This document shows positions 45,401-63,775 of a stretch of DNA of 64,000 nucleotides, piece by piece (within the stretch, counting starts at the first letter, position 1; each line of letters begins with the position of its first letter). This DNA is from Auanema rhodensis (Eukaryota > Animalia > Nematoda). Under the pieces are notes generated by a model, which saw nothing but the letters and a program-made list of their open reading frames with translations, was not told where the DNA came from and did no database searches. The position numbers were made by a program, and so were the translations under genes. The stretch spans positions 16,988,001 to 17,052,000 of the forward strand of contig OZ059897.1 in NCBI GenBank assembly GCA_964057225.1, read 5' to 3'.

Positions 45401-45921
45401 TTTTTTCTAGATGGCATTAGTGTGTATGTTACTTGGAAAGGCATTTATTCAAGGGGCTTTTAATATTTTGTATATTTTCACTTCCGAACTAAGCCCTACG
45501 GTAGTACGTAATACCGCTGTCGGAATTTCTTCTATGGTGATAATGCTTTATTGTTTAAAATCTAATATTTGTATTATTTAGATGGCAAGAATGGGTGCTG
45601 GAGCATCAGGATACATTGCGATCCTTAGTGATGTTACTTTAGCAATGGTTCCTATGCTTATATTTTCGATTTTTTCTTTATGTGCTGGAATATTGGTGAT
45701 GTTCCTACCAGAAACACAATATCTACCTCTCCCTGATACTATATGGGTATACTAATTTTTATGAGATTTCACCTCAAAGAATATTTTCTTTTAAGGATGC
45801 TGTAATGATGCGAACAAGAGCAAAATCACCTTGTGGCCATACTTCAAACACTTACGAGACAGACTCGTTGCAAGAAGAAGAATCATATCAAAAAGCAGAC
45901 ACAGATGTTGAGCAGAATTAG
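42497..45921 (+). CDS. SLC22/MFS organic cation transporter (oct-2-like)
   Basis: [11 protein letters not shown]; [10 protein letters not shown]; VSDRYGRK; ESPRWL; [11 protein letters not shown]; LPET...LPDT motifs. The 5' exons are less certain. Confidence 0.9.
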
Positions 45922-46357
45922 TAATTAGATTTAAAAAACAACAATAATAATAATCTACTGTGTAACTTTCTGAACAGCATTTTTTCATTTACGTTTTCTA
46001 TGGAATGATACAAATTTTCGGGTATTTCTGCACGTGTAAGCAGATAGTTGTGGAGCAATAGTATCGTTGTATGATCACACTGTCTATATAAAAGATGACA
46101 ATAAATATTTCTTCATTAATGTTTAAATGTTAAACTTTACAAAATAATGATATTGTTTGTAAATTGATATAAATTGTAAGGAAAAGCTGCAGTTAGTAGT
46201 AAAATTTGAATAATTTACATATGCAAAACGAGTCTTACAACGAAAGAATTCTAATCCCGATTTTCAATTTAGCGTCGTTTAGAATGTGTCCTAATCCATA
46301 AAACATATTAAATACCTTTTTAAATTAACTATGTTATAATAAACGTTCTAGTTTTAG

Positions 46358-49300
46358 ATGACGGAGTCTAGTGATCTTAGTTCCTGTAAATTAATTTTAG
46401 ACCAAGTATTAAATAGATGTCTTAACATCGAAACAAAGTCTCTAAAAGCAAGCTGTATAGGTAAATGTTGCATTGTTCATTTTAATTAAAATAATTTTAT
46501 AGATAACTCCTCTGCTAAAGAACTTATTATATTAGATGAAAATCTTCTAAGAGAACTTCTACAGCATCTCAATACTATTTCTTGTTTCAAATTCCTACAT
46601 ACATTACCTGAGGATGATTTAATACGAGTTATATTAGTTCTTGATTTTAATGTGAAATCAGTATTGAGCTATAGTGAAGAGGATTTCGTATGCAAATTTG
46701 ATATAAATTCGGTGTGATTATTAATAAGGGTATTTGTATTACATAAATATGTTTCTAGGATGCCCCTGATAGTTCTCTTCCTCTATTTAGAGGGTTGGAT
46801 GCATCAGTTGCGGTTTTGAAAATAATGACTTGTAATAATATGCCTATTAAAGTAATATTTTCTCTCTTATTGATAACTCAAATGTCTTTCCAGATTTTCA
46901 TGGAGGATTTGGTACAACGTATAGTCAATCTAATAAAGACTACCAATTCAAAATTAGTCATGCCATTAGTTCAAGCTAGCAGGCAGTCTGAGAGAAAAAA
47001 AGGTGATTTTAATAAACTAGCTTTAATTATCACAATCTACAGGTGCTAAGAGATCCAGGTCAAATGATCTAACTGTACCTATTATTCTCCAGCAAGTTTT
47101 TTCAAGAATCCAAGATATAGTAGGATCGCTAACTGAAATGGTAGTACTTGTATAATGTTGTAATTAAGATGTATTCAATTTAGATTCGTCTAAACATGCT
47201 AAATGAGAGTATCATCAGCTGCCTGGCTCAAGTAGGGATAGACTATTTTTTTTCTTCAAGTGTTCACGAATTGCAAACTCAGGTTAGCCCTGTCCTTTTC
47301 AATTTTATTAGTTGTTTTGCAGTTAATTTTCTTATTGGGCAACATTTTTGTGAATATTGACGAAGGCTTGCAAGTTGAGCTCATGAGAACAATTATGAGC
47401 TACTTATGTAACCCATTAATATGTAAAAAAGTTTGGCAAGCATATGAAAGTCCATCGTCAATATGCATTGAAGTTGAATTGCTTATACAAATTGTTCAAG
47501 CACTTGCATCGGTACTTAGTAATATTTACTTTTATTAACATATTGCATCAGATATCAAAACCAATTTCAAATGAGAAATCAAGTCCAACTACTAAAGATT
47601 TGAACGATTTTGTAAGTAGTAGACTTCGTCATGCTCAAAGATTGTTATCTTATTTGTTTCGTTTCTTCCTAATTGGGTATAGTGTAATTTATATACAGTA
47701 TAATATTGAACTAATTTTAATTAGATCAGAAGATGATTACCGGAAGTCTATTTTCAACAATATTGTTCATGATTTTCTATTGTTGTTGGATAGACCAGAG
47801 TACCCAGTTTCAACATTTTTTTTAACAGTGTTAGGAAGACACTTGATGGAATTATATAAGTGATGCCTGTATTTTTACCTAAATTATATTATTTGTTTTA
47901 GGAACAAAGCACTTGATATAGCTATTAGGACATATTGTTTAGATCTCATAGGAACTATTGCACTCCATATGTCTAAAACTGTCGATATGTCTAAGAGATC
48001 TTCTAAAACTGCAATTGATGTTTTTTAAGTACAGTTTTTTGCATTAATATGATATGGTTTTAGGAAATCGAATCTAAAATAAAAAATAGTTTGAAAGGTT
48101 CAAAGGAGGTATTCATTGTTTAGATAAGATTATTTAGATGTGAACTAAATTCCTTCAGAAATTAAATAAGACCCAAAGATTACAACAATCTCTAATTGAT
48201 TATTTAGCATTTTCAAAGGATAGTTGTATGATTGAGGTAAATTTTATTAGGATAATACTTCTGTAACGTCTTTCAGTTTGCTATGAAATATTATGCATCT
48301 GCCTGGCAATACCAGATCAAGCATCAGTTGCCTGATGCAGAACGGGTAAAAAAAAATAGCAAAAGAAAAGTTTAATTTTGTCAAATATTACAATATATTT
48401 CAAATTTAGTCCGAGGAACTCCCATCTTCTTTGCGGTTTCTACTCGCTTTATCTAATCCGAAATACATAAGGAAGCGTGTAAAGTAAAGCTTATTTTTTA
48501 ATTTTTATTATTATCATTTTTTAACAGAGTTGAGCCATATTTATTGTCTGATGATGAAGCTTATATAGTTGCTCGATATGTCACTACAGTGGGGGACGCT
48601 TATCTTAATTGCGAACCATTTATAAACTATGTAATAGGTGTTTTTGTTGTTTAAGTTATTAAGATTTTGTAGATTTTTCATGCTATTACTGCGGAATTAA
48701 TTCCTCTCAGGACAAAGGCTTTGAAATGTCTTTCGCATCTTGTGCAAAACTGTTCTGGTATTTTGAAGAAAGTTTGTCATACTGTTTGTATTTATTATAA
48801 TAATATATATATGGATATATAGGATTTTGTTGCCAATGCAATTCAAGAACGCTTGATAATTGATAGCAATGCATTGGTTAGAGAAGCAACTATTGAAGTG
48901 GTTGGAATCGCTGTCCTGAAAGATTACGAATTTCTTGATGTATATGAAAGTCAACTCCTTAGTAGACTTCAAGTAAGATTTGAGCATACCAATAGAACTT
49001 TTATTTATTTTAGGATACTTCCCTACTTGTGAGAAAACGTGTGGCGCGAGTCTTAAAGGCTATATGCGAACAGTATCCAACCAGTTCAAAGGTTTTCTCC
49101 TTTCTATGTTTTTTAACTGGCTTCTTTTATAGATACCGCGGTTTTTGTATAATATGTTATGCCGAATTGATGATGAAAAAACTCTTCAAGTTATCGTTCT
49201 AGATACTTTCTTCGCAAGATATTTTTTACATGACCAGGAGGAAGCTTATTATGTGCGATCAGTTAGTTGTATAATAATATTAAATCTGTATTGTCATCCG

Positions 49301-52153
49301 TACATCAGGCTACTGAATTGATCGCTATTGCTCAATGCTGTACTGCAAATGAAAAAGTATGCACATTTGAAGCTCTTTTAGAGTTGATGTTATCGAATTA
49401 CGAAAATGCTATGAATGGTTTTTCATGTTTCCATACACTTTGAGAGATTATTGTTTAGCCATTCCGAACATATCTGAACGTCTCATTGAATGCTTGAAGC
49501 CGTATAGGAAGAATTCATCAAGCGATGATCCGAAAAGTTTTATTTTCAGTATTATATGTATTCTATGCCGTTTTGGAATGGTACCACTTTATTTTTAGCA
49601 ATTAGATATGTTAAATTTTAGGTGATGCCAGAAGTCTTGGAAAATCATGTGGACTATGTGATTTGGTTTTTGGAGTATGCAATTGAGAGTAATGTTCAAC
49701 CAGCGGTTTGTTCAAATGCTACTTGTATTAGATACCTACAATGTTTCCAGGTAGTTCAAGATATAGTTCGGAGTATGGAACGATTGATACCGTACATAAA
49801 TACAACTCAGAAGTCATTCTATGATAGGTGTGTAATGATTAATTATTGTATATTAATTGTTAGCAAATAGGATTCATTCTGCTTTTCAAGTGTTGCTATA
49901 TGCTAAATCAAAAGGACTAATTTCCTTCGTAACAGCTTGTTTAGCTGAACTTTATAGAAAACAACCAAGTCCAGATAACCCAGTACTTATCGAATTCCTG
50001 AACTCTTTAGGTCTGTTTTCAATTATTAATATAAATTTTTATCTTCGGTATTAGCCTTATTGAACAGAATCAAAAAGCAGTTTGAAGAGGAATCAAATGA
50101 TCCTCTTCCTGAATCAATTGAAATCATTTTAAGGTTTTTCTTCATAAAAAAGTACAAGTTTATTTCAGTTTCAAGTTTAGAGCGTTTTTCTCCGTTGGAG
50201 TGTATTCTAGATATTTCAATTTTGATATAATTTTTGCCAATGATTCAAAAGCTCAAGAATGCTTATGCTTGGTTAGTTTGAATTGGCTTAAATGTTTGTG
50301 AATGCTTGTTTAGGGTTACAATTTCTCTGCTAATTCTCAGGAGGATCAACCACTCCGGTATGTATTTGAATGTGTTGTACCTTATTAGTTATTAAGACGA
50401 TTCCGTGACAATACGTATGGGCTCTTACTGTTTTTTGCTTCTCGGGGACATCCTGATTTTGCTGTAAACGCTTTGTTCTCATTAGGTGCAGCTTAACTAT
50501 TCCTCAAGCCATTCAACTGCATTTTAGGGCATTTATGTGTCACATATGCTGAGTATGTGCAGAGTTCAGCAATTCATAAGTTGTATATTGCTATACTAAG
50601 TGCTGATAATCGGAAATTATTATCAATGAAAATCCAGGTAACGTTACTGTATATGAGTATCTGTTTAATTTTTACAGACTCTTGCTAATATCAAGTTGTT
50701 TTTGGTATCCGAGGAGCAGAAGATCAGAGAATCTAAGATAGGCATGTATTTATATATATTCATAGTAATTTAGTATTTTTACTTCAGAAAAGGATGATAA
50801 CAATGAAGATGACTTGAAACAAATGGATTTGCCTGAAAATGGTGTAGGCTCTGTATTTATTCAATTGTTTTTCAAGTTCATACTTGCCTGTTATTTTAAC
50901 GCTAATGGAACTTTAAGAAAAACATCATCAGAGGTAAGATTATCACAATATCTGAAATATTTTTATTTTTTTTAGATTGTTAAAATTGCAATATGTCATG
51001 GCTTTGTAAACCCAGCTGTCTGTGCATCTGAGCTCATAGCAATGTCGTTGGATTCTGATGAGTTTATCAGAAATGAGACCATTGCTTTGCTAAAAGAAGT
51101 AAATAAGAAATATCCTGATTGTTTAATCGTAAGTTATTCTGAGACAAATAGAAAAAGTTAAATAATGCTAGGGAAAATCAGCGATTGGATGTTTAAAAGC
51201 ATATGAACTGTCTTGTTTGAAAGCTGCCGATGAAAAACAAGTTATTAGGGGATTTAATGAAGTCTCAAAAGAGAATGAGATCATTTTAACGTCTTCAATG
51301 TCTGATTATTACCAGTTATTTACTTCCTCCAAAGCTCATAGACGTCAATTTGTTAACATAATGCTAAGGTACATCATTGACAAATAATCGTTATAGATTT
51401 CATTTTTAGCTTGTTTTCTGAGAGTAATGCTCATAAAATATCGACAGGACAGTTAGTTTTCTTAGCTGATAACTTAATCGCTTTGCCGTTTGAGGTAAAA
51501 AATATATTAAAATGTATTTTGATTATATGTCTTCCAGGTGCTTGATGAACCTCTTTATGTTATAAAGCATATTGACGGGATTGTTAGTCTATCAGGACAA
51601 AATTTTTTGATTTACTTGAAGGAGAACGTTTTTCCAAAAAATTTGAGTAAAGAGAAAGAGGATGATATTCTTTTCACGGAAGAGGTTTTATTAGGTTTAT
51701 ATATATATCCATTTTTCTTTTCTATTACACATAATTTTATTACAGAGAATTTCCCAAAAAGTGAAGATTTGATTCGTGGTTTAATGGACCATGGAAAAGT
51801 TTGTATCATTCTCATGTATATGAAGAACTATCTTATGGGTCTCTATCGTTTGAGTGACAAGTTTGCCTTATATAAATACTATTGCTATGTATTTTATTCA
51901 GAAGAGTCCAGGGCTATTCTGCATCAGAGCCGAAACTTTATTTGAAACCTGTCAATAAAAAAGAGGTTTCTTTAGAGGAGTATAATAATGCTGTTAGCAT
52001 TTTCCATTCAAATGTATCAGAGCACAACTGGAAGAAAATGCTAGCCTGTTGCATATGCAAGGTATATTTAATGCATTTCCTAAGTAAATAAATATATTTC
52101 AGTTTCGTTCCACACTCTTGGCTCTAGAGCCCGATGAAATTGGTGATTTATGA
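46358..52153 (+). CDS. Divergent, N-terminally truncated Scc2/NIPBL cohesin-loader paralogue (HEAT core only)
   Basis: Exons align in order with the neighbouring scc-2: LRTKALKCL/LRTKAMKCL, VREATIEVVG/VREATIELLG, VRKRVARVLKAICEQYP/VRKRVIRIMREICEKYP, VLDEPLYVIKHIDGIVSLSGQ/VLDEPLYTIRQIDGIIALSGQ, FRSTLLAL/FRKMLLAL. Intron positions and phases are shared in the exons checked. Confidence 0.88.
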
Positions 52154-52757
52154 TTTTATTTAGATAATTTTTACCTTATTTCTTGTACTATGAAATTTTT
52201 GAAATATAATTAGCTTGTATATGTTTCTGTGAATATGAGTTGAAATATACACTTATTATAGTTGGTTTGTTTTTTGATGAATTAAATTACTTTTATTAAC
52301 AATACATATAAGTCACAACTTTCAAAAATTGTTATTATGTAGTAAATGAAGTATGAAACTATTCAAAATAAGGAAAGAGATCTTACGAAAGAAAAATAAA
52401 GATCAGGATGAGTAAGATCGTGACTATTTACAAGACAATTGATGAAGATGTTCGTTATTTCATAGACATAAAAAGCAAGTGAACATATGTAGCCATAACT
52501 AAAAGATACTCTTTTGATAAAAAACAGGTTAAAAGCGGAATCGTGCTTTTTCTCAACTGATTTAGAGGCAAGTTAGTTTGAATAAATAAAAGAAAATGAC
52601 TAGAACTAATAAACATACAATACCATGAGAAGCACATGTAATCAAACCCATAATAAGAAAGGCTAAAAACACAACTTGAATGAAACGATACCTACATATT
52701 GAGATCTACGGCCACAGTTTTAGATAAATACCTCGTAAGTAAAGATTGACCATTCAA

Positions 52758-55700
52758 CTATTCTTCTTCCATTGGTTGGCTCTCACTAGCAGGTTCATCG
52801 TTTTCACTTTGACCACGATCAACATCTTCTTCATCGTCCTGTAATAGTAGAAATGTTTTAAATATAATATTTACTTTTTATCCTTACATCGCGCTCAGTA
52901 ACACCTGTTGTTACACCATCCTCATTTTCGTCGCCACCATCATCTTCTAAGCGATCCAGCGCTAGAAGCATTTTGCGGAACTTAAATAATAAGCATTTAT
53001 AGAAAAAAGGTTTCGCATATCTTACATTACAGATTTTGTGAGCAAGCTTATAATGTCCTGGTATTGTATTTCTTTCTTCGATTACTTCTGGTCGCATTTC
53101 TTCTAATGCAGAATGTGGATGAAACATAGGAATATTCCTTCGCGTGACTGCTTTTTCGTAAACCTTTGCAGCTTCAGATGGAGAGTACTCTTGAACTTTG
53201 CTGAAATTTTAATAGTTTAATTAAGTATTCATTAGTTAATCAACTTACACTTCAGTAAATCCATACAATTTCATCAAGAAATTTTTCAAATACAACAAAA
53301 TGAAACAAGCTTGACTGTTTACCATCAAATCAAACAATTCGCATTTGCTTTCAGGGAATCGTCCTAATTTTTTAATATTACTCTTTGGTTTTCAAAACGG
53401 CACAAACTGTATATATGATCGGGTTCAAATAATGAATCATCGTCTTCAGAACTCGAGAAGCCAGATATTAAGCGATCCTTGAATTGATTCAAAATAGATT
53501 GTCCTGACAGTGCTATGATGCCGTCAATTTGACGTATCGTATATAAAGGTTCATCAAGTACCTGAAAGAAAATATTTCCTCAAATAACAGGCTGAGCAAT
53601 ATACCTGGTAAGGAAACATAGCAATGTTATCAGCAACAAAAATCCACTCGGAAAGGGGTAACTTTTCTCGACTATCTTCGCTAAATAATCTTAAAGGAAA
53701 AAATACATATATGACAAATATTATTTATGTCCACCTGAGAACACTATTTAAAAATGATCTTCGATGAGACCTGTTCCCCCTCAAACTTTGGTACAATCCA
53801 CTAAGAATAGCTTGTCCATCATTTGAGAATCGAGGTAATCCGAACTGATCAAGGTTAGTGTGCGCTAATAAATGAGACAACAATAAATTCACATATTTTT
53901 AAATAATCTAACCATGCGCAGATAAAGAAGAAGAATCGCATATTCTTATTCCACGAATTATCGAAAACTTTTCTCTGTTAAATTGAGAATGCAACTTATA
54001 TGCAACTCTAATTCCGTTAATAGCTTTGCTCTGAAAAGAAAAACAATTTACGATGGAGAAAATTGGTTAACGTACTTGAACCATTCCCGCATATTTCGTG
54101 TCAATTTCTTTCAACAAATTCTCCACTTTATTTCGAATCGATACAATCGGATCCGTAGTCATAGCAACAAGAGTAGCAATCGAAGAACCAGGAGTAACTA
54201 GGCCTTGGGACAATGTGAGCCATGCAACCTAAAAATGGACTGTTTCGAACGAAGAGAAATTTCAGAAACATACCTGTACAGCAGACTGTCGAACTGCTTC
54301 ATTATTATTGAAATAGCAACTTAGTACATTCAGCCAATAAATTTGAATAACAGCAGAACTCATACCAGATCCAGCCAGTTCCATTTCTTTGAGATTCTGC
54401 TGATCTTTGGCTTTATCCCCTGTAGAAGTATATATAATTTAATAAGATGGGGAAACTTACATTCTTCGTTGCTCTTCATTAACTTTTTTTCCTCAGCTAA
54501 TAAAAACATTTCTAAGTTTTTCAAAGTCTGAATTTTCAACTGTAGATATTGAGGATCATTAGAAACTAATAATGTTTTATACATATGCTTTATCTCGCCT
54601 CGCCCAAGATATTGAGCATGGCGTGCACATAAATGTCCTAAACATCAAAGTAAATTTTCGAAAAATAAAAGGCAAAAAAACCTATTGATGAAATAGCTCT
54701 TAAACGAATTGATGACAAATGATTTCGAGAGAACGAGCTAAGAATGAAGAACACATTGTCTCGATACCGTCTATTTTCGGGCTTATCATCGGCAAGCTCA
54801 AGAGATTCTCCTGCTGCTGTTTGACATGGAGGCAAATTCACCTAAATCAAAATATATGTATATAAAATTAGAATATTAAAATAAAGTTACCACAACTAAA
54901 CTTCTTGCGGCTTCAGCATCATTCTCCAGCATAGTGTCAAAATCAAAATATCGGCATAACAGCCCAATAGCAAACAACGATCTGAACAAAATTTCGTGAT
55001 TCAACAAAAAACTTTAATGAAACCTCTGAAGAACTGGTAAAGCTGAAGGTGAAGGGGTAAATCTATCATTCTGCTGAAACGTCAACTGCATTGAATTCAA
55101 ATTTCTCAAAAAATAAAGAAATTTTTGAGCCATTGTTGTTTGCTTTCTAGGGAAATGATTGTATACTGCTGCTGCGCAAGCAACAACAGATACTACTATT
55201 GTAACTCCATTGGTCATCATCAAATTACTAAGAGATTCGTCAAGACTGGAAGGGAACATAAAATAACTAGCTTTTAGAATAAAAATTTACCCTTGAAGAA
55301 AAGCATCACTAGGGTGACTCATCAACGGAACAACACGTTCCAACATACAAATTACTTTATTTAAAACTGCTTGTTCACCATTAGAACGCACAGTCATCGA
55401 TAAATAAGGTTGTAGTGTTTCAGCATGTCGCACAAGAAGCTCAGGGCGAACCTCAAAAAAATAATGTTTTTGAATACTAATACTAAGAAACCTTGCTGAA
55501 CATGGAAAGAGTTGTTAAGGATGCTAATAGTCGTTCTTGATTCTCTTTCTGGTTTTGAAGTGATTCTTGATCTTCCGGATCCTCAGCATTTCTCGAACCA
55601 TCAGAAGCCATTTTCGTTTCCAAAGTCAGAATACTATCAACTAATGAATCCACAATTTGTTTGCTGGCTGCCAGCATGTTCTGTATTCAAAAATTGATAA

Positions 55701-58700
55701 AAAATCGAGAACTGAATTTACCTTATCGGCTGTTTTTAATAATGCTTGCAACAATTGCTCCAAAAAATCAATTGTACTTTCGTTTGCACATATTTGTGCA
55801 ACCAAAGTCATTTGCATTACCTGAAAAAAAATGAATGAGAATCTTCAAGATTTTCATTACTTTTTTGCAAAGAACATCCGCTGATCGTTCCGAACAAGGT
55901 TGGAACCATAGAGCCATAAAAGTTTCTTGGACCAACTTCTTTACTCCATCCTCATCGGTTATTCGACGGACCAATTTAGAAAGCATATCGGGGATCTATT
56001 TTTTTTAATTAACCAAAAACATAAATATCCTAGAAACCTGTTTATAGTTAGGATATTTTTCACAAATTTCTCTCATTATACGAATAACACGTTTTCGAAC
56101 AGCAGTTCCAGAATCCTAAATATTACTTTCAGCGTAATAGTAAAAATAGTAATGTACCTTGATTCTCTCAAGAAGAATACCATAATAATCAGGAATAAAT
56201 TCTTCTTTAACAAGTAAAAATTTTCCTAATAATTCAATAGTAGCTTCACGGACAGCAGCATTTGGATCAATCATTCGCGAATTTACAGCTAGTCTTACAT
56301 CAGGCTAAAAAATAATACAAAATATCACAAATATAAAATTAAAACATTTACCATTCCAAGAACTTCATAATCTGCTTCAATAATTTGAGTGAGGCATTTC
56401 ATCGCTTTTGTGCGTAAACTGACAGTACTTTCTACTTGAATCCCATATAGAATCTAGAAACAGAGCAAAATAAAAACAGATCAACTAATTTAACAAACTA
56501 TTTTTAGATAAGAGTCAAACGAATGAGTGAATTCTCTTCTAGATGCTAAGTATTTTACTGTCCAACTAGCATCACTGTCCAGCATAACATTGCCCGTTTT
56601 CCTGAATAGAAAATATATACAATAAGATTAAAAATAAAAATTGCCTGATATGTTCTGTTCGTTTTTTGACTTGTTTTTTATCTACTAGTTTAGTTAGAAA
56701 CTCTTTGTTAGTTTGTGCTTTTTCATTCATTCTTTCCATCTTTTTCTCAAGCTTCCTTTTATCCTGAGCAAATTTAAAAATTAAAAGTATAAATCAAATT
56801 GACTTACTTTTTCAGTTAGCTCAGTAGATTTATCAGACTTGAAGTTTTGCCTTGCTATATCTAGATCTTCAGCTGTTTCCTTATACCATTCGGCAGCATA
56901 GTATTTGATAGCATACTTAATTTAAAATTTTAGTTATTATATTTTACTTAAAAAACTTACATCTACACTAATATCATCACCCATTTTATCAACAAGGAAA
57001 TCAATTAAAGCTTGTTCCAGCTTTTTCAATCGATCACTTGCAGAAAACTAAAATTAAAATAGAGAAGAAAGATAGAGAATGGTATAATACTTCGCTAATA
57101 TCCACATCGGAAACATTTTCGAATTGGGGCTCTTCTTCATCATCATATATGATAGTTTTAACAACAATCTAAATAAGACAAAAAGTTCAAAACAATACTA
57201 GATAAATTAAACCTCTAGTCGTTTCTCAGAATCTTCAACTGCCGATTTCGCATCTTTACGTAGGCGCGCTGTTATAGATCCTAAGTAATCAAGACAGGCT
57301 TGACGAATTACTATATCAGTGGATTTTGCTCTATAAAGAATACCGTAATTCATATTGAAACCTCTGCAAAAAACCTGTAATATTTAACTAATAATGTTCC
57401 TAGAATATTCAGAATGAATTCAGCAGCTGGGAATGGTGGTTTATGTAATGCAGCCAAAAGGTCTTGTAGGAAAGCATCAAAGAGGCGTCTATAATCTTCT
57501 TCACCGTCTGTTTTACTTCCTTTACATGAACATCTAAAAAAAGAAGTTAAAGCATGTATTCTAGAAAACGATTACTTGGCTAAAAATCCATTGAGAAATG
57601 TTCCAGCAAGTCTTTGAGCATCTTTAAAAGAATCTTTCACAATTGAATCAGGATTAATTTCATTCTTATTATCTTCGTCGTCGTTTCTTTTTCTTTTGGG
57701 CATCTTGAATAATAACAAATATCGAAAAAAAAATATTTAAGAAAAACCTTAACCGCAGATTGAATAAGTTGTAAGATTAAAACAGTTGTATTGCTTATCC
57801 ATTGTTCTGGCCCGAGACGGTAGCTATTGTTTGTATTCTTACCAGGAGGTAAACGATGAAGAGAATTCAGAATGTCTGTGAGGATTCCTACCCTTACTCC
57901 TTCCGAGCTAATAGCAAAAATATTGGATGCGAGAAGCATAGCCTGCGATTTTAAGTAATGAATTGAAATATACCAATATATATATATGTACCTGTCGCTG
58001 TAACTCTCCTACATTGCTGACAAAAAACGAAGCTACGGCCATACTTGACAAATGATGGATACTAGTCTCTGGTAGTAATTGCACACGAACCTAAATAATA
58101 CCGTTATATGAACAATTTCGAACTCGACTCACTAGTTCTGAGAAACATCCAACAAGATCCGCAATTCTATCATATATCTTTTGAACTGTATGGGACCGAT
58201 TACTAACTCCGGCTTTTCTTTTTCTTCGAGGATCCTCAGCTGAAACAGAATATATATTATAACAATAAAATAAAACTTGCCTTTTTGCTTCTTGGAATTA
58301 TTGGAGCGAAAGACACTATCAGAAGCAGGAAATATGATATGGTTTAGATATTGCTTACAAAGATTAATGGCTCTCTCAATAGTATCCTCGATAAAAACCT
58401 AAATATCATAAGGTTTGGGCATTGGTTAATTTTGCATACTTGTTTTGGCATTTTATAGCTAGTCATAATCATTAAAGCTGTGCAAGCAGCATCAGCTGCG
58501 CGAGCAAGTCGCTCATGTATTAATTCTCTAAAAGCAACATCCTCCTCCTCAGCATTCTATAAACATTTACAATATACGTTAAAACTGTGTGGTATCTAAC
58601 CTCTTCGAGTATTACAGGAACTAAAAGCCTAGATCCGTCTTGACTTATGACATCCTTCATGTTTCTCTCAAGCATAGTTTCTAACTTGACCAAACGATCC

Positions 58701-61639
58701 ACAGGTACTCTATTAAGTTTTTTCCAACTTTTTAGCTTTTGTGTTTGGTTTCTCAGATCATCAAGTACAGCTCTATCTATTAGAAGTTCTTGACTAACAT
58801 CATCGTCTTCTTCTTCTTCATCTCAAATCAATTGGAGAATATTAAAAGATATTGTTATATATAATACCTGTTTTATTATTGCAGGCCATAAGCACATCCA
58901 TGTCTTCAACTTGATCTAAAATTTGATCAACTAAAAGCATAAATCTATTGAATGAGTCATTCTCAGCCATAACCTAAAAAATAAAATTAGTGTTATTTAT
59001 GTTTTGGAACAAACATCATTATTCCAACATTCCTGAATATTTTCATCTCCTCGTCTGCGTTTACGTTTCTCCAATCTTTTTCTCTGTCTTTCATTCCATT
59101 CTAACTCCCGTTGATGAATTACTAAAGAATTAATTTAAGAAAATAATAAAGATTTAGATCATACCTTCAGTGGGAGTAGGGGGTCGTTCTTCTCGTTCTT
59201 CCTTTTTTCTCTTCTTCTTCTTATCATAAAATTTATTTTCCTCATCACTACCCGATTCTTCTTCCATTTTCTGTTCTGAAGCTTCCATTTTTGAAATCAT
59301 TTCTATATCTTGTTGTTCCGCCTGTTCTTCTTCCAATGTCTTCGTTCTATTTCGGCGCCTTCTCCCTTGAGTAGGGTCGAAGTAGTCAGTTAAAGAATCA
59401 AATAAACATTCAACCTTAAATATACAGAAGTGAAATATTAAATAAAACACTGAGCATACCATATCTTTCTTTTTACGGTGAGTTTGAGCTTTTGGTTGTT
59501 TACCAACACTAGCCATTTGTCTTCTTAACTTTATTGCTTCCTGATCAAGTTGGACCTGCACTTTTTGAGGTTCCTTATTAGGTACTGATGGAACACTATT
59601 TGTGACAGGTCCCCCCAGAACATGAGACATCTTAAAATGACAAATACATTACAATAAGAATAAAAATGATAAACCGAAGGTCTGTTTAAGTCATCTTCCA
59701 TTTCATTTAATAGGTGTTCAGTTTCAGCTATTCCCATATTATGCTCCGGTTCAACGTCAAGAGCCTATTATTTTAATAATAAAAATAATGAAAAAAAATC
59801 TCACATTGCAATTATACTCCATAACGTCTTTTATTAATGGTGGCATTTGCGCTAAAGGCAAATCATTTGTTTCGGCCAACTCACCGTGGTGATCCAAGCG
59901 AGTTCGTCTGGAGTTGAAAATAATAAGTAAATTAATGAAATCAGTACAAACATATCACGAATATCCACTTTAGATAAAGCTTGTGAAATCATTTTCACAA
60001 TATCTGGACTAGAATTATCCAGTATGGGCAGTGCATCGTCAGAGCAAACACAAGTTAAGCTCGATTTTTCGAGACTTTCGCTAGGAAAAGGAATCACTCC
60101 CATAACTGTAACAGTAATAGATAAATTTGTTATATAACTGCGAAAATTGTTTACAATTATTGATAAAATGAGTGGCCACTAACGCAACAGGATGTCTAAA
60201 ATTTTCCATTCTAGTTGCGCATTCCTGCTTCAGCTGAAAATAACCAAAAATAAGAAACTAACCGAATTAATAAACAACAAACCCTTTCATCCTCACGCTG
60301 TCTTTGCAGTTGCTCATCCCTAATTTTCATCAATTTCTCTCGTTCAATTCTTTCAGCTTCTTCCCTTTTCTTTTTTTCTTCCTCTAATCTCAACGCTTCC
60401 TCCTGAATATTAGAGCACTACATTTCATAAAATGTAGAATTTAGTACCTGTTGTCGAAGCATTTCTTGGTGCTCCTTTTCTCTTTGAATCATCAATTCGC
60501 GTTGTTTGCGCTGCTGTTCTTCACGTTCAGCCAATTCCTGAGAAAAAAAAATTAATCTTTTATAACTTAGCGCAGACAAAACCTTCTGTCGTTTTCTATT
60601 CAACTCTTCCTGGCGTTTTATTTCCATTTGCCTACTTTGCTCTTCCAACAGACGTTGCTGCTGTTCATGCTAAATATTGATAATAAGTAAAATATTGAAT
60701 ACAAACAATACCAAAGTTAACTGTTGTTGAGGCGGCATAGATTGCTGAGAAGACTGAGAATGAGAAGGTTGTTGCCTAGCTTGGGGTTGCATCTGGTGTT
60801 GATGTTGGTGACTTTGTATATTGCTTTGCGCAGGAATAGACGACAAGACTTGACCAATTTGGTTTGGAATTGCTTGGGGTATAGAGTTTTGATGTAGTTG
60901 GTGTTGCGACGTTAGCTGAGTTTGATGCGGTTGATGAGTACTAGCATGTGGAGGTTGGTGAGTACTAGCATGAGGAGGTTGATGAGTACTAGCATGAGAA
61001 GGTTGATGAGTACTAGCGTGTGTAGGTTGATGAGATGATGAATGCTGATTTTGATGTTGCTGTTGGTGAGGTAATTGGTGAAGCGGTTGATGTTGGTGTT
61101 GTGATTGGTGTTGAGATTGCTGTTGTAATTGAGGTTGATCTTGCATGAATCTTTGATGATTATGCTGCAATGGCTGCTGTTGGACAGCTTGCTGTGATAA
61201 AACCTGCTGTGGATGCATCTAAATCTTATAGTGAAATTAGTTAACAAAAAGGTAGTATAATACATGTTGTTGAGGCTGTTGAAACATTGGAATTTGTTGC
61301 TGCATCATAAGATTATTATATTGCTGCTGTTGAAAAGGTTCCATGTTTATCATCTTTAAAAGAACGCTTACTAACAAGTAAAAAAACTAACATACTTGAT
61401 TCTGGCCATAAAATTGGAATTGATTCATATATTGTTGTTGTAAAATCATCTGAATGTGAATGGTCCTATACGTATAAACAGCATTCAAAATAACATACCT
61501 GATTATAATGATCTTGAGGATTCATCATTTGCTGTTGGCCATGACCAGGGATATTCATATTATTTTGGTAATTCTGGAATCATACATTTAGTAAACAAAC
61601 AGAAAATAATTTTCATACTTGTATATCACGTGGATCCAT
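52758..61639 (-). CDS. scc-2: Canonical cohesin loader SCC-2/PQN-85 (Nipped-B/NIPBL), many exons
   Basis: MDP start, Gln/His-rich N-terminus, charged coiled-coil region, then HEAT core with LRTKAMKCL, VREATIELLG, VRKRVIRI, LQPYL, GLVTPGSSIATLVAM, ADNIAMFPY and DEPLY; acidic tail. Confidence 0.95.
60929..61034. repeat. 24-bp coding tandem repeat, about 4.4 copies, encoding HQP(P/S/T)HAST in the scc-2 N-terminus
   Basis: GGTTG(A/G)TGAGTACTAGC recurs at 60929, 60953, 60977 and 61001. Confidence 0.9.
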
Positions 61640-62059: not shown

Positions 62060-63775
62060 TTAGGCGAAGTAAGAGTCCAACACTGGTTCCCCTTGATCAA
62101 TCATCCCTTTGTTCATAAGTCCAAACTCATTCCCATTGAAATTATCCATATTTATAGTGGTAGCACCTATGTTTTTATCAAGCAGAGCATTTTTACTTAA
62201 ACTTTTCTTAGATGAAAGAGATGGAGAAGTTTTAAGAGGAGTGACTGTTTTAGATTCTACTGTCACGATGCTTTTTGCCTTATAGCACATTGTTATTAAT
62301 ACAGCAATAAGAACTAAGATTACTATACTTAGAGAGGTTGTTATGATAAAAGCATTTCTGAAAAAAATAGATTATAAAATATATACAATAACACAAACTT
62401 CATCAAAAACGTTGTAAAAGGATTTGTGGTCACATTTCCAGTAACAGCTGAAAAAAACACAAACTATTAGGATTCTATAGCTTATCTCACATTTTCTCAT
62501 AGTTGTTTCCGAATTTATATTTGCATTCTCTATCACATTATGAATCTCAATAGGAATACTGTTGTTAACAATAGTTGGTGTTGAAGTTTTAATTGTTATA
62601 AATGGTGCTACTGATCCGGGTATTGTAGAATTAAGTGTCAAAAGTTCTCCTGATTCGTACACATTCAATGTAGCTTCAGAAGTTGCGATCGTAGTGAAAT
62701 ATGTAGGATTGTTACTCCTCTTTTTCATAGTTTGAGTTGTGATAGTTGTTGTAGTTACGGGAGCTTTGATGGCTATCTTACGATTCGGAGTTGTGGTGAT
62801 TCTGGTGGTTCTGATAGCTGTTAAAGTTGTGGTAGTGCTTGACCTTCTGGTAGTAGTTGGAGTTGTGGTAGTGGTAGGAGTTGTGGTAGTGGTAGGAGTT
62901 GTGATAGTTGTAGGAGTTGTGGTAGTTGTAGGAGTTGTGGTAGTGGTAGGAGTTGTGGTAGTTGTAGGAGTTGTGGTAGTTGTAGGAGTTGTGGTAGTTG
63001 TAGGAGTTGTGGTAGTTGTAGGAGTTGTGGTAGTTGTAGGAGTTGTGGTAGTTGTAGGAGTTGTGGTAGTGGTAGGAGTTGTGGTAGTTGTAGGAGTTGT
63101 GGTAGTGGTAGGAGTTGTGGTAGTTGTAGGAGTTGTGGTAGTTGTAGGAGTTGTGGTAGTTGTAGGAGTTGTGGTAGTTGTAGGAGTTGTGGTAGTTGTA
63201 GGAGTTGTGGTAGTTGTAGGAGTTGTGGTAGTTGTAGGAGTTGTGGTAGTTGTGGTAGTTGTAGGAGTTGTAGGAGTTGGAGTTGGAGTTATGATGGTCC
63301 TCGAAGTAGCAGATGCTACCATGGAAGCTGAAGCATTTTTATTTCTGTAATAGTAGTGGAAACTTTACTTGAATCTGCAGAGATTGATTTTACGATAGTG
63401 GGAGTTCTAGTTGTAGTAGTGCTATAGGTTATTAATGATATAGATGTAGTTGGGATATGAAAGGGTTTTGATTGCTCTACTGTTAAAGTACCTAATGATG
63501 CAGTGTCGCCTAAATCTTATGGTGGTAATGCTCGAAATATTTGAATATTGATATTATAGGCTTGAACTCTAACCTGACGGCGAGTTATTAATATTTGCTA
63601 GACTACTCTGATCATTCAAATGTTCCTTTTCTGCATCATTTTCATCTAGTTGGTTAGCATTTTCTTGAAAAGATTGCCGAACAACTAAAGGTGCTAATAA
63701 CAATAGATGAATTAACGCTAAACTCAAAAGGAATTAGAATATTTCACTGTTGTGAACCTTACAAAACAACAGCAT
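62060..63775 (-). CDS. Type-I transmembrane mucin-like protein: signal peptide, PTTTTT repeat stalk, single TM, short tail
   Basis: Predicted start [16 protein letters not shown]; long Thr/Pro exon; last exon [27 protein letters not shown]...VLDSYFA*. The 5' splicing is tentative. Confidence 0.8.
62859..63255. repeat. 18-bp coding minisatellite GGAGTTGTGGTAGT(T/G)GTA, about 22 near-identical copies, encoding PTTTTT on the minus strand
   Basis: Unit read directly; copies differ mainly at one synonymous position. Confidence 0.95.

What the first reader, a model, noticed from the sequence alone, without database searches (positions are those of the whole stretch)
46358..61639. Second, highly diverged cohesin-loader gene (Scc2/NIPBL paralogue) tail-to-tail with canonical scc-2
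Seen: two convergent genes with stop codons about 600 bp apart encode collinear Scc2 HEAT cores. The best blocks are strongly conserved (16/21 in VLDEPLY...LSGQ; 11/17 in VRKRV...YP), while other exons are barely alignable and introns show no visible similarity. Intron positions and phases are shared, which points to an inverted DNA-level duplication. I found no frame disruption in the exons I translated. Known: Scc2/NIPBL is the kleisin-binding HEAT protein that activates cohesin ATPase, loading and loop extrusion; C. elegans has one gene (scc-2/pqn-85). Inference: the plus-strand copy is an old, fast-evolving but constrained paralogue, possibly a lineage-specific loader or regulator for a specialised SMC-kleisin complex. 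Candidates are meiotic REC-8 or COH-3/4-type cohesin, or a sex-chromosome-specific complex. The AT content and tiny introns are compatible with Auanema-like rhabditids, which have unusual X-chromosome meiosis, but the species is not established here.
Basis: partly seen in the sequence, partly recalled or inferred. Interest (0 to 1): 0.92.

Follow-up and report, generated by a model that had tools for sequence, protein, structure and literature searches.

The report
Shortened second cohesin-loader gene in Auanema
This roundworm has, next to its normal gene for the protein that loads cohesin onto chromosomes, a second, much-changed copy that lacks the front third; a sister species keeps the same intact copy, so it is a working gene of unknown role.

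Summary
The minus strand (61639-52758) carries a canonical scc-2/pqn-85 gene of 50 exons and 2225 aa with a Q-rich N-terminus. It lies tail-to-tail with a second Scc2-like gene on the plus strand (46358-52153; 38 exons, about 1386 aa, no internal stop). Their stop codons are 604 bp apart.

The two proteins align collinearly at 29% identity. At least 24 of the short gene's 37 introns match the canonical gene in position and phase, so this was a DNA-level inverted duplication, not a retrocopy.

The short gene starts at the exon for canonical residue ~683. It therefore lacks the MAU-2/Scc4-binding and Q-rich N-terminus and encodes only the HEAT "hook" (a natural Scc2C/NIPBL-C).

Auanema melissensis (JU1783) has an orthologue, CAI4229224.1, an unnamed protein of 1391 aa. 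It is 46.6% identical and has matching intron positions and phases. Synonymous sites are saturated, yet pN is 0.33 against pS 0.75, and ω=1 is rejected (LRT 529). The gene is fast-evolving but constrained.

The DNA-binding patch (yeast S717/K721/K788/H789 equivalents) is kept. The acidic loop that contacts Smc3 is remodelled.

Function and expression are untested. I found no paper describing it. Another note on this window by the scan (s1-391295) says the same about the truncation.

The parts
46352..46357 (+). TTTTAG 3' splice-site-like sequence directly before the start codon; candidate trans-splice acceptor
   Evidence: Sequence read (agttttagATGACG). That it is used for trans-splicing is an inference from nematode biology; there is no RNA evidence.
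46358..52153 (+). Short Scc2/NIPBL paralogue (Scc2C-like): 38 exons, about 1386 aa, stop TGA at 52151-52153
   Evidence: Spliced alignment to P0002, refined. There is no internal stop. 36 introns are GT-AG and one is GC-AG, and most are 40-51 nt long. It is 46.6% identical to A. melissensis CAI4229224.1. The exact exon ends are uncertain at 46688/46712, 50272-50388 and 51685-51747, but every alternative stays in frame.
48706..48726 (+). LRTKALK motif; its T and second K are the equivalents of yeast Scc2 S717 and K721 (DNA-binding patch)
   Evidence: Alignment of the orthologue to 6zz6_D, which carries full yeast numbering; MSA and coordinates; residue roles from PMC7492086 and PMC6028919.
49029..49043 (+). 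VRKRV motif; its K and R are the equivalents of yeast Scc2 K788 and H789 (DNA-binding patch)
   Evidence: identical in both short copies and in all canonical sequences.
49169..49183 (+). DDEKT loop, equivalent to yeast 819-EDEED-823, which salt-bridges Smc3 K112/K113; remodelled relative to the canonical xDE[DE]G
   Evidence: the contact is described in PMC7492086 section 17. The JU1783 short copy has DDNES here.
50976..51158 (+). Exon with a Nipped-B_C (PF12830) match
   Evidence: Pfam E 4.9e-09, 37 bits against a cutoff of 26.4.
51530..51623 (+). Exon segment (VLDEPLY...) that keeps 72% DNA-level reverse complementarity to 53476-53569 in the canonical gene
   Evidence: the repeat finder pair I1.
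52154..52757 (.). 604-bp spacer between the convergent stop codons (the 3' UTRs of both genes)
   Evidence: Models; sequence.
52758..61639 (-). Canonical scc-2/pqn-85 gene: 50 exons, 2225 aa
   Evidence: Spliced alignment to Haemonchus P0026, refined. It is 52% identical to the Haemonchus protein and 64% to Logan transcript protein P0034. An exon gives Pfam Nipped-B_C at E 2.4e-12, and another exon a sub-threshold Cohesin_HEAT match (E 0.0009, 20 bits against a cutoff of 21).
60712..61218 (-). Q-rich (prion-like) exon of the canonical gene; it has no counterpart in the short copy
   Evidence: Translations.
58868..58973 (-). Canonical exon (V-MAENDSF...) whose first codons correspond to exon 1 of the short copy. 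Its conserved internal Met aligns at or next to the short copy's start codon.
   Evidence: plus residue 1 aligns to canonical residue 683, two residues after the canonical phase-0 intron that follows aa 681.

Best explanation
Shown: the plus-strand gene is a real, selectively maintained paralogue of the cohesin loader SCC-2/NIPBL. It arose by a partial, inverted DNA-level duplication of scc-2. The copied segment began in the intron upstream of the exon for canonical residue ~683. The copy therefore lacks the whole N-terminal third (the MAU-2/Scc4-binding region and the Q-rich and disordered parts). It encodes the complete HEAT-repeat hook, the part used in vitro as Scc2C/NIPBL-C. The duplication predates the split between this species and Auanema melissensis. 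A burst of change followed, and the gene has since been under purifying selection.

Inferred: the 3' splice site of the copied exon now serves as a trans-splice acceptor, so the conserved internal ATG became the first ATG of the mRNA. The protein keeps the DNA-binding patch, the Nipped-B_C/Smc1-docking region and an NLS-like basic cluster. It most likely still binds cohesin (kleisin plus engaged SMC heads) and DNA, and acts as a MAU-2-independent activator or regulator of cohesin's ATPase. Its specificity may be altered, since the loop that contacts the Smc3 acetyl-lysines is remodelled. It may be specialised for one tissue, such as the germline, or one kleisin.
For: - Homology and collinearity.
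- Intact ORF: 38 exons with canonical splice sites.
- Start point: the short copy starts two residues after a canonical phase-0 intron. The 437 bp upstream carry no ORF of 50 aa or more and no similarity to canonical N-terminal exons. The A. melissensis model starts at the same Met.
- Intron sharing: 24 exact matches plus about 8 near matches out of 37.
- Orthologue: A. melissensis has 37 introns at matching positions and phases and 46.6% identity.
- Constraint: pN 0.33 against pS 0.75; omega about 0.03, LRT 529 against omega=1. 31 canonical-invariant positions changed to the same new residue in both short copies, and 84 of 167 are kept in both.
- Hook coverage: P0002 residues 38-1273 align to 6WG3_E residues 77-1328 at E 6e-88; Nipped-B_C at E 3.6e-30.
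- DNA patch: the equivalents of S717, K721, K788 and H789 are all kept.
- Literature: Scc2 without its Scc4-binding N-terminus fully activates cohesin's ATPase (PMC7492086, PMC6028919). N-terminally truncated human NIPBL loads cohesin without MAU2 (bioRxiv 10.1101/477752).
Against: - There is no RNA or protein evidence for this species, so expression, trans-splicing and the exact exon ends at three places are unverified.
- The Cohesin_HEAT Pfam model is not matched above threshold.
- The strictly conserved DE[DE]G acidic loop is changed in both short copies. About 40% of canonical-invariant residues are lost, especially at canonical positions 800-900, 1100-1200 and 1300-1400. ATPase activation may therefore be altered or lost.
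- Only two species are known to carry the gene.
- Neither the canonical gene of A. melissensis nor any further orthologue could be found.
Confidence: 0.6

Rival explanations
1. Antagonist or decoy. The short protein still binds the kleisin in competition with SCC-2 and PDS-5, and binds DNA, but no longer activates the ATPase properly. It would then damp or time cohesin loading and loop extrusion rather than drive them.
For: The acidic loop that salt-bridges Smc3 K112/K113 in yeast is remodelled in both short copies, and its invariant Gly is lost. Only 50-61% of canonical-invariant residues are kept. The long stem branch points to a change of function.
Against: The loop keeps three acidic residues in both species. 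The DNA patch and the C-terminal Smc1-docking region are well kept. A pure decoy would not need a conserved DNA-binding surface over the whole 1390-aa hook.
Confidence: 0.2
2. Recruited to another partner. The hook now serves another SMC-kleisin complex (condensin, SMC-5/6) or a role outside SMC complexes, and only its ancestry links it to cohesin.
For: It diverges strongly from canonical Scc2 (29% identity). 31 shared derived substitutions fall at otherwise invariant sites. Nematodes have repeatedly evolved specialised SMC complexes (PMC12629237).
Against: Nothing positive supports it. The retained motifs are the ones that contact DNA and cohesin heads in solved cohesin structures.
Confidence: 0.1
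3. Non-functional remnant: a duplicate that is decaying or is kept open only by chance.
For: It evolves fast, no expression data exist, and it is known from only two species.
Against: About 4.2 kb of coding sequence in a 31% G+C region has no stop. All 37 introns have usable splice sites. The orthologue has matching intron positions and phases although synonymous sites are saturated. omega=1 is rejected with LRT 529.
Confidence: 0.04

Closest known systems
Canonical SCC-2/PQN-85 (NIPBL, Nipped-B, Scc2, Mis4), including the copy 604 bp away
   Same: The HEAT-repeat hook is collinear over about 1400 aa. Both have the Nipped-B_C domain and the LRTKA[LM]K, VREA, VRKRV and DEPLY motifs. Intron positions are shared.
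   Different: The short copy lacks the first ~682 residues (MAU-2/Scc4 binding, Q-rich region). It is only 29% identical, gives no Cohesin_HEAT Pfam hit, and has a remodelled DE[DE]G loop. Between the two species the short copies differ by 1.06-1.29 substitutions per site. The only canonical pair available (window vs P0034, species unknown) differs by 0.43-0.45.
Engineered Scc2C (yeast 133/151-1493) and NIPBL-C (human 1163-2804) constructs
   Same: Almost the same boundaries: the orthologue aligns to the 6WG3 NIPBL-C chain from chain residue 77 onward. Those constructs cannot bind Scc4/MAU2 yet activate cohesin's ATPase and clamp DNA (PMC7492086, PMC6028919).
   Different: Those are laboratory truncations of the single gene. 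This is a separate, naturally evolved gene that coexists with the full-length loader.
NIPBL-deltaN made by alternative translation initiation in human cells (Parenti et al., bioRxiv 10.1101/477752)
   Same: An N-terminally truncated loader lacking the MAU2-interaction domain that still supports cohesin loading in vivo.
   Different: It is a rescue product of a mutated gene and removes only the extreme N-terminus. It is not a diverged paralogue.
Yeast scc2-E822K L937F, the Scc4-bypass alleles (PMC6028919)
   Same: They change the same acidic loop next to the DNA patch. The window's short copy has Lys at the position equivalent to E822.
   Different: The Lys is seen in one species only (JU1783 keeps Glu there), so it may mean nothing.
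Zebrafish nipbla/nipblb
   Same: The only Scc2/NIPBL paralogue pair my literature search turned up.
   Different: My understanding, not checked here, is that they are full-length duplicates from the teleost genome duplication and are not truncated.
Lineage-specific SMC-complex paralogues in nematodes (DPY-27/condensin I-DC, Pristionchus SMC-4 duplicate, COH-3/4 kleisins)
   Same: Duplication and specialisation of chromosome-architecture subunits within nematode lineages (PMC12629237, PMC4174578).
   Different: Those are SMC or kleisin subunits. I found no description of a duplicate of the loader/HAWK Scc2.

Membership tests
Scc2/NIPBL/Nipped-B cohesin-loader HAWK | HEAT-repeat hook homologous along its length to the NIPBL/Scc2 C-terminal hook | tested here: met
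   The plus model is 29% identical to the window's canonical protein over 1530 columns (582 bits). Orthologue P0002 residues 38-1273 align to human NIPBL 6WG3_E at E 6e-88, and it also matches 5T8V and 6YUF.
Scc2/NIPBL/Nipped-B cohesin-loader HAWK | Nipped-B_C domain (PF12830) | tested here: met
   Window exon 50976-51158: E 4.9e-09, above the gathering score. P0002: E 3.6e-30 over profile positions 2-185 of 186.
Scc2/NIPBL/Nipped-B cohesin-loader HAWK | Cohesin_HEAT repeat (PF12765) | tested here: inconclusive
   No hit for window exon 48823-48990. P0002 gives only a sub-threshold generic HEAT hit (E 1.9e-4). The VREAT core of that repeat is nevertheless conserved in the alignment.
Scc2/NIPBL/Nipped-B cohesin-loader HAWK | N-terminal region that binds Scc4/MAU-2 | tested here: not met
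   The CDS starts at the equivalent of canonical residue ~683. No upstream exons were found. The A. melissensis orthologue starts at the same Met. So it is not a complete loader subunit in the Scc2-Scc4 sense.
Scc2/NIPBL/Nipped-B cohesin-loader HAWK | Conserved DNA-binding patch (yeast S717, K721, K788, H789) | tested here: met
   The equivalents are T, K, K, R in both short copies, the same as in metazoan canonical proteins.
Scc2/NIPBL/Nipped-B cohesin-loader HAWK | Acidic loops contacting Smc3 K112/K113 (yeast 781-DD, 819-EDEED) | tested here: inconclusive
   The first loop is kept as D[TS], as in canonical metazoans. The second changes from xDE[DE]G to DDEKT (window) or DDNES (JU1783): still acidic, but the invariant Gly is lost.
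Scc2/NIPBL/Nipped-B cohesin-loader HAWK | Binds kleisin and stimulates cohesin's DNA-dependent ATPase and loading | not testable with these tools
   This needs biochemistry or genetics.
Processed (retro)pseudogene or retrocopy | No introns, poly-A tail, disrupted frame | tested here: not met
   There are 37 introns, most at parental positions, and the frame is intact.

The most novel reading that the evidence does not exclude
The short copy is a MAU-2-independent cohesin activator specialised for the germline, working with one meiotic kleisin or on the X chromosome. It would then be part of the reason why Auanema separates X sister chromatids early and transmits the X in sex-specific ways. It would be a loader-level counterpart of the way nematodes built X-specific condensins from duplicated subunits.
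Probability: 0.1. Interest if true: 0.88.

Novelty: new variant of a known kind. Interest (0 to 1): 0.66.

Why it matters
My literature search found no Scc2/NIPBL paralogue other than the zebrafish pair, and C. elegans has a single scc-2 gene. The division of labour between its N-terminus (Scc4/MAU-2, targeting) and its hook (ATPase activation, DNA clamping) has been studied mainly with engineered truncations and mutant alleles. Here evolution has made and kept a hook-only gene beside the full-length one, at least since the common ancestor of two Auanema-type species.

That offers a natural test of what a MAU-2-independent hook does in vivo, and of which surfaces can change. The DNA patch is kept while the Smc3 acetyl-lysine loop is remodelled.

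The carriers belong to a genus known for premature X-chromatid separation and non-Mendelian X transmission. Workers in that field have suggested that altered cohesin dynamics could explain these traits (bioRxiv 10.1101/205211), so the gene is an obvious candidate to knock out.

It also shows how trans-splicing could let a partial duplicate become a gene: any internal 3' splice site followed by an ATG can become a 5' end.

Tried and rejected
- **Retrocopy or pseudogene:** rejected by the introns, the intact frame and the orthologue.
- **Assembly or haplotype artefact:** rejected by the 29% identity.
- **Ancient paralogue at the base of nematodes:** the LG+G4 tree placed it there with a long-branch warning. 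Under LG+C20 it moves inside Rhabditina (99 SH-aLRT). The tree that joins it to the Auanema-type canonical pair is 1.06 lnL better than the free tree (p-AU 0.57; p-AU 0.485 under LG+G4). The basal placement is therefore dropped, but the exact node is unresolved.
- **Frameshift at 51685-51747:** a frameshift seemed possible if the intron were spliced from GT 51685 to AG 51745. The phase-1 intron 51695-51745 keeps the frame and matches the phase of both the orthologue and the canonical gene.
- **Synteny with A. melissensis:** its flanks share nothing with the window. Its 10 kb downstream is 74% N, and the 2.6 kb that can be read has no scc-2 exon. A conserved tail-to-tail layout there is unlikely but not excluded.
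- **Further members:**
  - An exhaustive HMMER search with 109 aa of the short copy gave only 12 hits, and P0002 was the only short-type one.
  - Word-index searches with P0002, with an Ostertagia canonical core and with P0034:1000-1994 found no other short copy and no A. melissensis canonical protein.
- **Other gene structures:** look-ups for C. bovis, C. nigoni, Steinernema and Nippostrongylus failed because the proteins were not on record.
- **Source of transcript P0034:** the species behind SRR10133172 could not be identified.
- **dN/dS values:** the exact values are not usable because synonymous sites are saturated.


Full report
**1. What is there**

The window is AT-rich (about 31% G+C here). 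A six-frame comparison of the plus strand 45.5-52.6 kb with the reverse complement of 52-62.5 kb gives about 16 collinear protein-level matches at 32-50% identity (summed E 1.9e-64). Exons of both copies match Pfam Nipped-B_C. An exon of the minus copy also gives a just-sub-threshold Cohesin_HEAT match.

I wrote a protein-to-genome spliced aligner. It reproduced three publicly annotated genes exactly, so I trust its models:
- the A. melissensis short gene, 1391/1391 residues;
- Mesorhabditis spiculigera scc-2, 2088/2088 residues;
- Pristionchus fissidentatus scc-2, 2061/2061 residues.

**2. The two genes**

*Minus strand.* This is a canonical scc-2/pqn-85 gene:
- 50 exons, CDS 61639-52758, 2225 aa;
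- a Q-rich exon at 61218-60712;
- 52% identity to the Haemonchus protein and 64% to the transcript-derived protein P0034 from Logan run SRR10133172.

*Plus strand.* This gene has 38 exons, CDS 46358-52153, about 1386 aa and a single terminal stop.
- 36 introns are GT-AG and one is GC-AG. Most are 40-51 nt long, like those of the neighbouring gene.
- Three exon ends are uncertain: 46688 vs 46712, the 17-nt exon at 50341-50357, and the intron at 51695-51745. All alternatives keep the frame.
- The stop codons are 604 bp apart.
- The start codon follows a TTTTAG.
- The upstream gene on the same strand is an MFS-type transporter (weak Pfam match). It ends near 45.92 kb and has an AATAAA at 46100.

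**3. Relationship of the copies**

The two proteins align at 29% identity over 1530 columns. Residue 1 of the short protein aligns to canonical residue 683, two residues after a canonical phase-0 intron. Its ATG aligns at or next to a Met that is also conserved in the strongylid proteins (VMAE...).

Of the short gene's 37 introns, 24 lie at the same alignment column and phase as canonical introns. About 8 more have the same phase within a few columns in poorly aligned stretches. One exon still shows 72% DNA-level complementarity.

**4. An orthologue exists**

An exhaustive HMMER search with 109 aa of the short copy returned only 12 proteins. One of them, P0002, is NCBI CAI4229224.1, an unnamed protein of Auanema sp. 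JU1783. That strain is now called A. melissensis (PMC9984802).

P0002 is clearly the orthologue:
- 1391 aa with the same N-terminus;
- 46.6% identity end to end;
- 37 introns at matching positions and phases.

Its genomic flanks share nothing with the window. The sequence downstream of it is mostly gaps, and what can be read holds no scc-2 exon. The tail-to-tail layout is therefore probably not conserved there, but this is not certain.

No other short copy was found, and no canonical A. melissensis protein either. The searches have limited reach, so absence elsewhere is not shown.

**5. Constraint and age**

Between the two short orthologues pS is 0.75 (saturated) and pN is 0.33. A pairwise GY94 fit gives omega near 0.03 and rejects omega=1 with LRT 529. 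The value itself is rough because of the saturation.

I scored 167 positions that are nearly invariant in 25 canonical proteins. The short copies keep 102 and 96 of them, and 84 are kept in both. At 31 positions both carry the same new residue. That is change before the species split, followed by conservation.

Three introns are shared by both short genes and by the Mesorhabditis and Pristionchus canonical genes but are missing from the window's canonical gene. One intron found in all canonical genes is missing from the short genes. The duplication therefore predates several intron losses.

The trees give the following:
- The short clade has a stem of 1.7 (LG+G4) to 2.9 (LG+C20) substitutions per site.
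- Under LG+G4 it falls at the base of the nematodes, with a long-branch warning.
- Under the mixture model it falls inside Rhabditina (99 SH-aLRT).
- The tree joining it to the window's canonical gene plus P0034 is slightly better than the free tree (p-AU 0.57).

The duplication is thus no older than Rhabditina and may be specific to the Auanema lineage. It is at least as old as the split between this species and A. melissensis.

**6. What the protein keeps and loses**

*Lost:* everything before canonical residue ~683. That includes the extreme N-terminus, which in yeast and human binds Scc4/MAU2 (PMC6028919; bioRxiv 10.1101/477752), and the Q-rich region.

*Kept:* the whole hook.
- P0002 residues 38-1273 align to residues 77-1328 of the human NIPBL-C chain 6WG3_E at E 6e-88.
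- I used the yeast Scc2 chain 6zz6_D, which carries full-length numbering, to map the four DNA-patch residues whose mutation abolishes loading (S717, K721, K788, H789; PMC7492086, PMC6028919). They correspond to T and K of LRTKALK and to K and R of VRKRV. Both short copies keep all four.
- Retention of invariant residues is high in the Nipped-B_C and C-terminal region, which in yeast docks on Smc1.
- A basic KRSRS cluster that could act as a nuclear localisation signal is shared by both short copies.

*Changed:* the loop equivalent to yeast 819-EDEED-823, which salt-bridges Smc3 K112/K113. It reads xDE[DE]G in every canonical protein examined, but DDEKT here and DDNES in A. melissensis.

The Lys in this species sits at the position of yeast E822, where E822K lets yeast live without Scc4 (PMC6028919). 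That is a one-species observation and I give it little weight.

**7. Most likely mechanism**

The shown steps are the partial inverted duplication, the hook-only product, the conservation and the retained DNA patch.

The inferred steps are:
- The copied 3' splice site acts as a trans-splice acceptor, which makes the internal ATG the first one in the mRNA.
- The protein enters the nucleus and engages cohesin and DNA without MAU-2.
- It has diverged in how it addresses Smc3, or in which kleisin it uses.

Engineered Scc2C and human NIPBL-deltaN show that such a protein can work (PMC7492086; 10.1101/477752).

The rivals are a competitive antagonist, recruitment to another complex, and a dead remnant. 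The last is strongly disfavoured.

**8. Novelty**

The A. melissensis protein is deposited but unnamed. Full-text searches found no description of a second Scc2 in nematodes. The only Scc2/NIPBL paralogues they turned up were the zebrafish pair. A recent survey of SMC-complex duplications in nematodes that included Auanema does not mention scc-2.

I class this as a new variant of a known kind. It is interesting because it is a natural separation-of-function allele in gene form, in a genus with odd X-chromosome cohesion (10.1101/205211). The link to that biology is pure conjecture at present.

**9. Limits**

There are no RNA data for this species, and its identity is not established. It is an Auanema-type rhabditid and not A. 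melissensis itself. The species behind P0034 is unknown, so the rate comparison with the canonical gene is only indicative: about 1.1-1.3 against about 0.43-0.45 substitutions per site.

Noticed in passing
window 50742-50787 (+), 58280-58240 (-), 56644-56602 (-); L001:10903-10944: GC-AG introns turn up at 1 of 37, 2 of 49 and 1 of 37 introns in the three Auanema-type Scc2 genes. That seems high compared with the roughly 1% I recall for other nematodes. All acceptors in my models are AG, so these genes need none of the non-AG acceptors noted elsewhere in this genome.
   Followed up: partly
window 50276-50388 (+): The best protein-guided model needs a 17-nt micro-exon (50341-50357) followed by a 31-nt intron, well below the 40-nt floor of every other intron here. 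A single 117-nt intron (50272-50388) is an in-frame alternative. RNA data are needed to choose.
   Followed up: partly
window 45919-46358 (+): The upstream MFS-type transporter gene ends about 437 bp before the short copy's ATG, on the same strand. There is an AATAAA at 46100, and a TTTTAG sits directly before the ATG. The layout would suit an operon or an SL-trans-spliced downstream gene.
   Followed up: no
window 62375-63364 (-): A long open frame encodes about 30 tandem PTTTTT(T) repeats (mucin-like, Thr/Pro-rich) just upstream of the canonical scc-2 start. A 103-aa stretch that looks hydrophobic, like a membrane anchor, follows at 62063-62371. Neither has a Pfam match.
   Followed up: partly
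window 49178-49180 (+): The short copy has Lys at the position equivalent to yeast Scc2 E822, where E822K bypasses the need for Scc4. The A. melissensis orthologue has Glu there, so this may be coincidence.
   Followed up: partly
L001:15780-25779 (A. melissensis CALQYR020007446.1): The 10 kb downstream of the A. melissensis short gene is 74% N. No canonical SCC-2 protein of that species turned up in any search. Its canonical gene may lie in unassembled sequence or be unannotated.
   Followed up: partly
P0007 (Ostertagia ostertagi KAK6029946.1): This annotated SCC-2 model contains the same ~70-aa segment twice (SSKGNKNEGEEDYRALF...IRTVSLEYL). That is probably an assembly or annotation duplication. 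I used Haemonchus P0026 as the reference instead.
   Followed up: no
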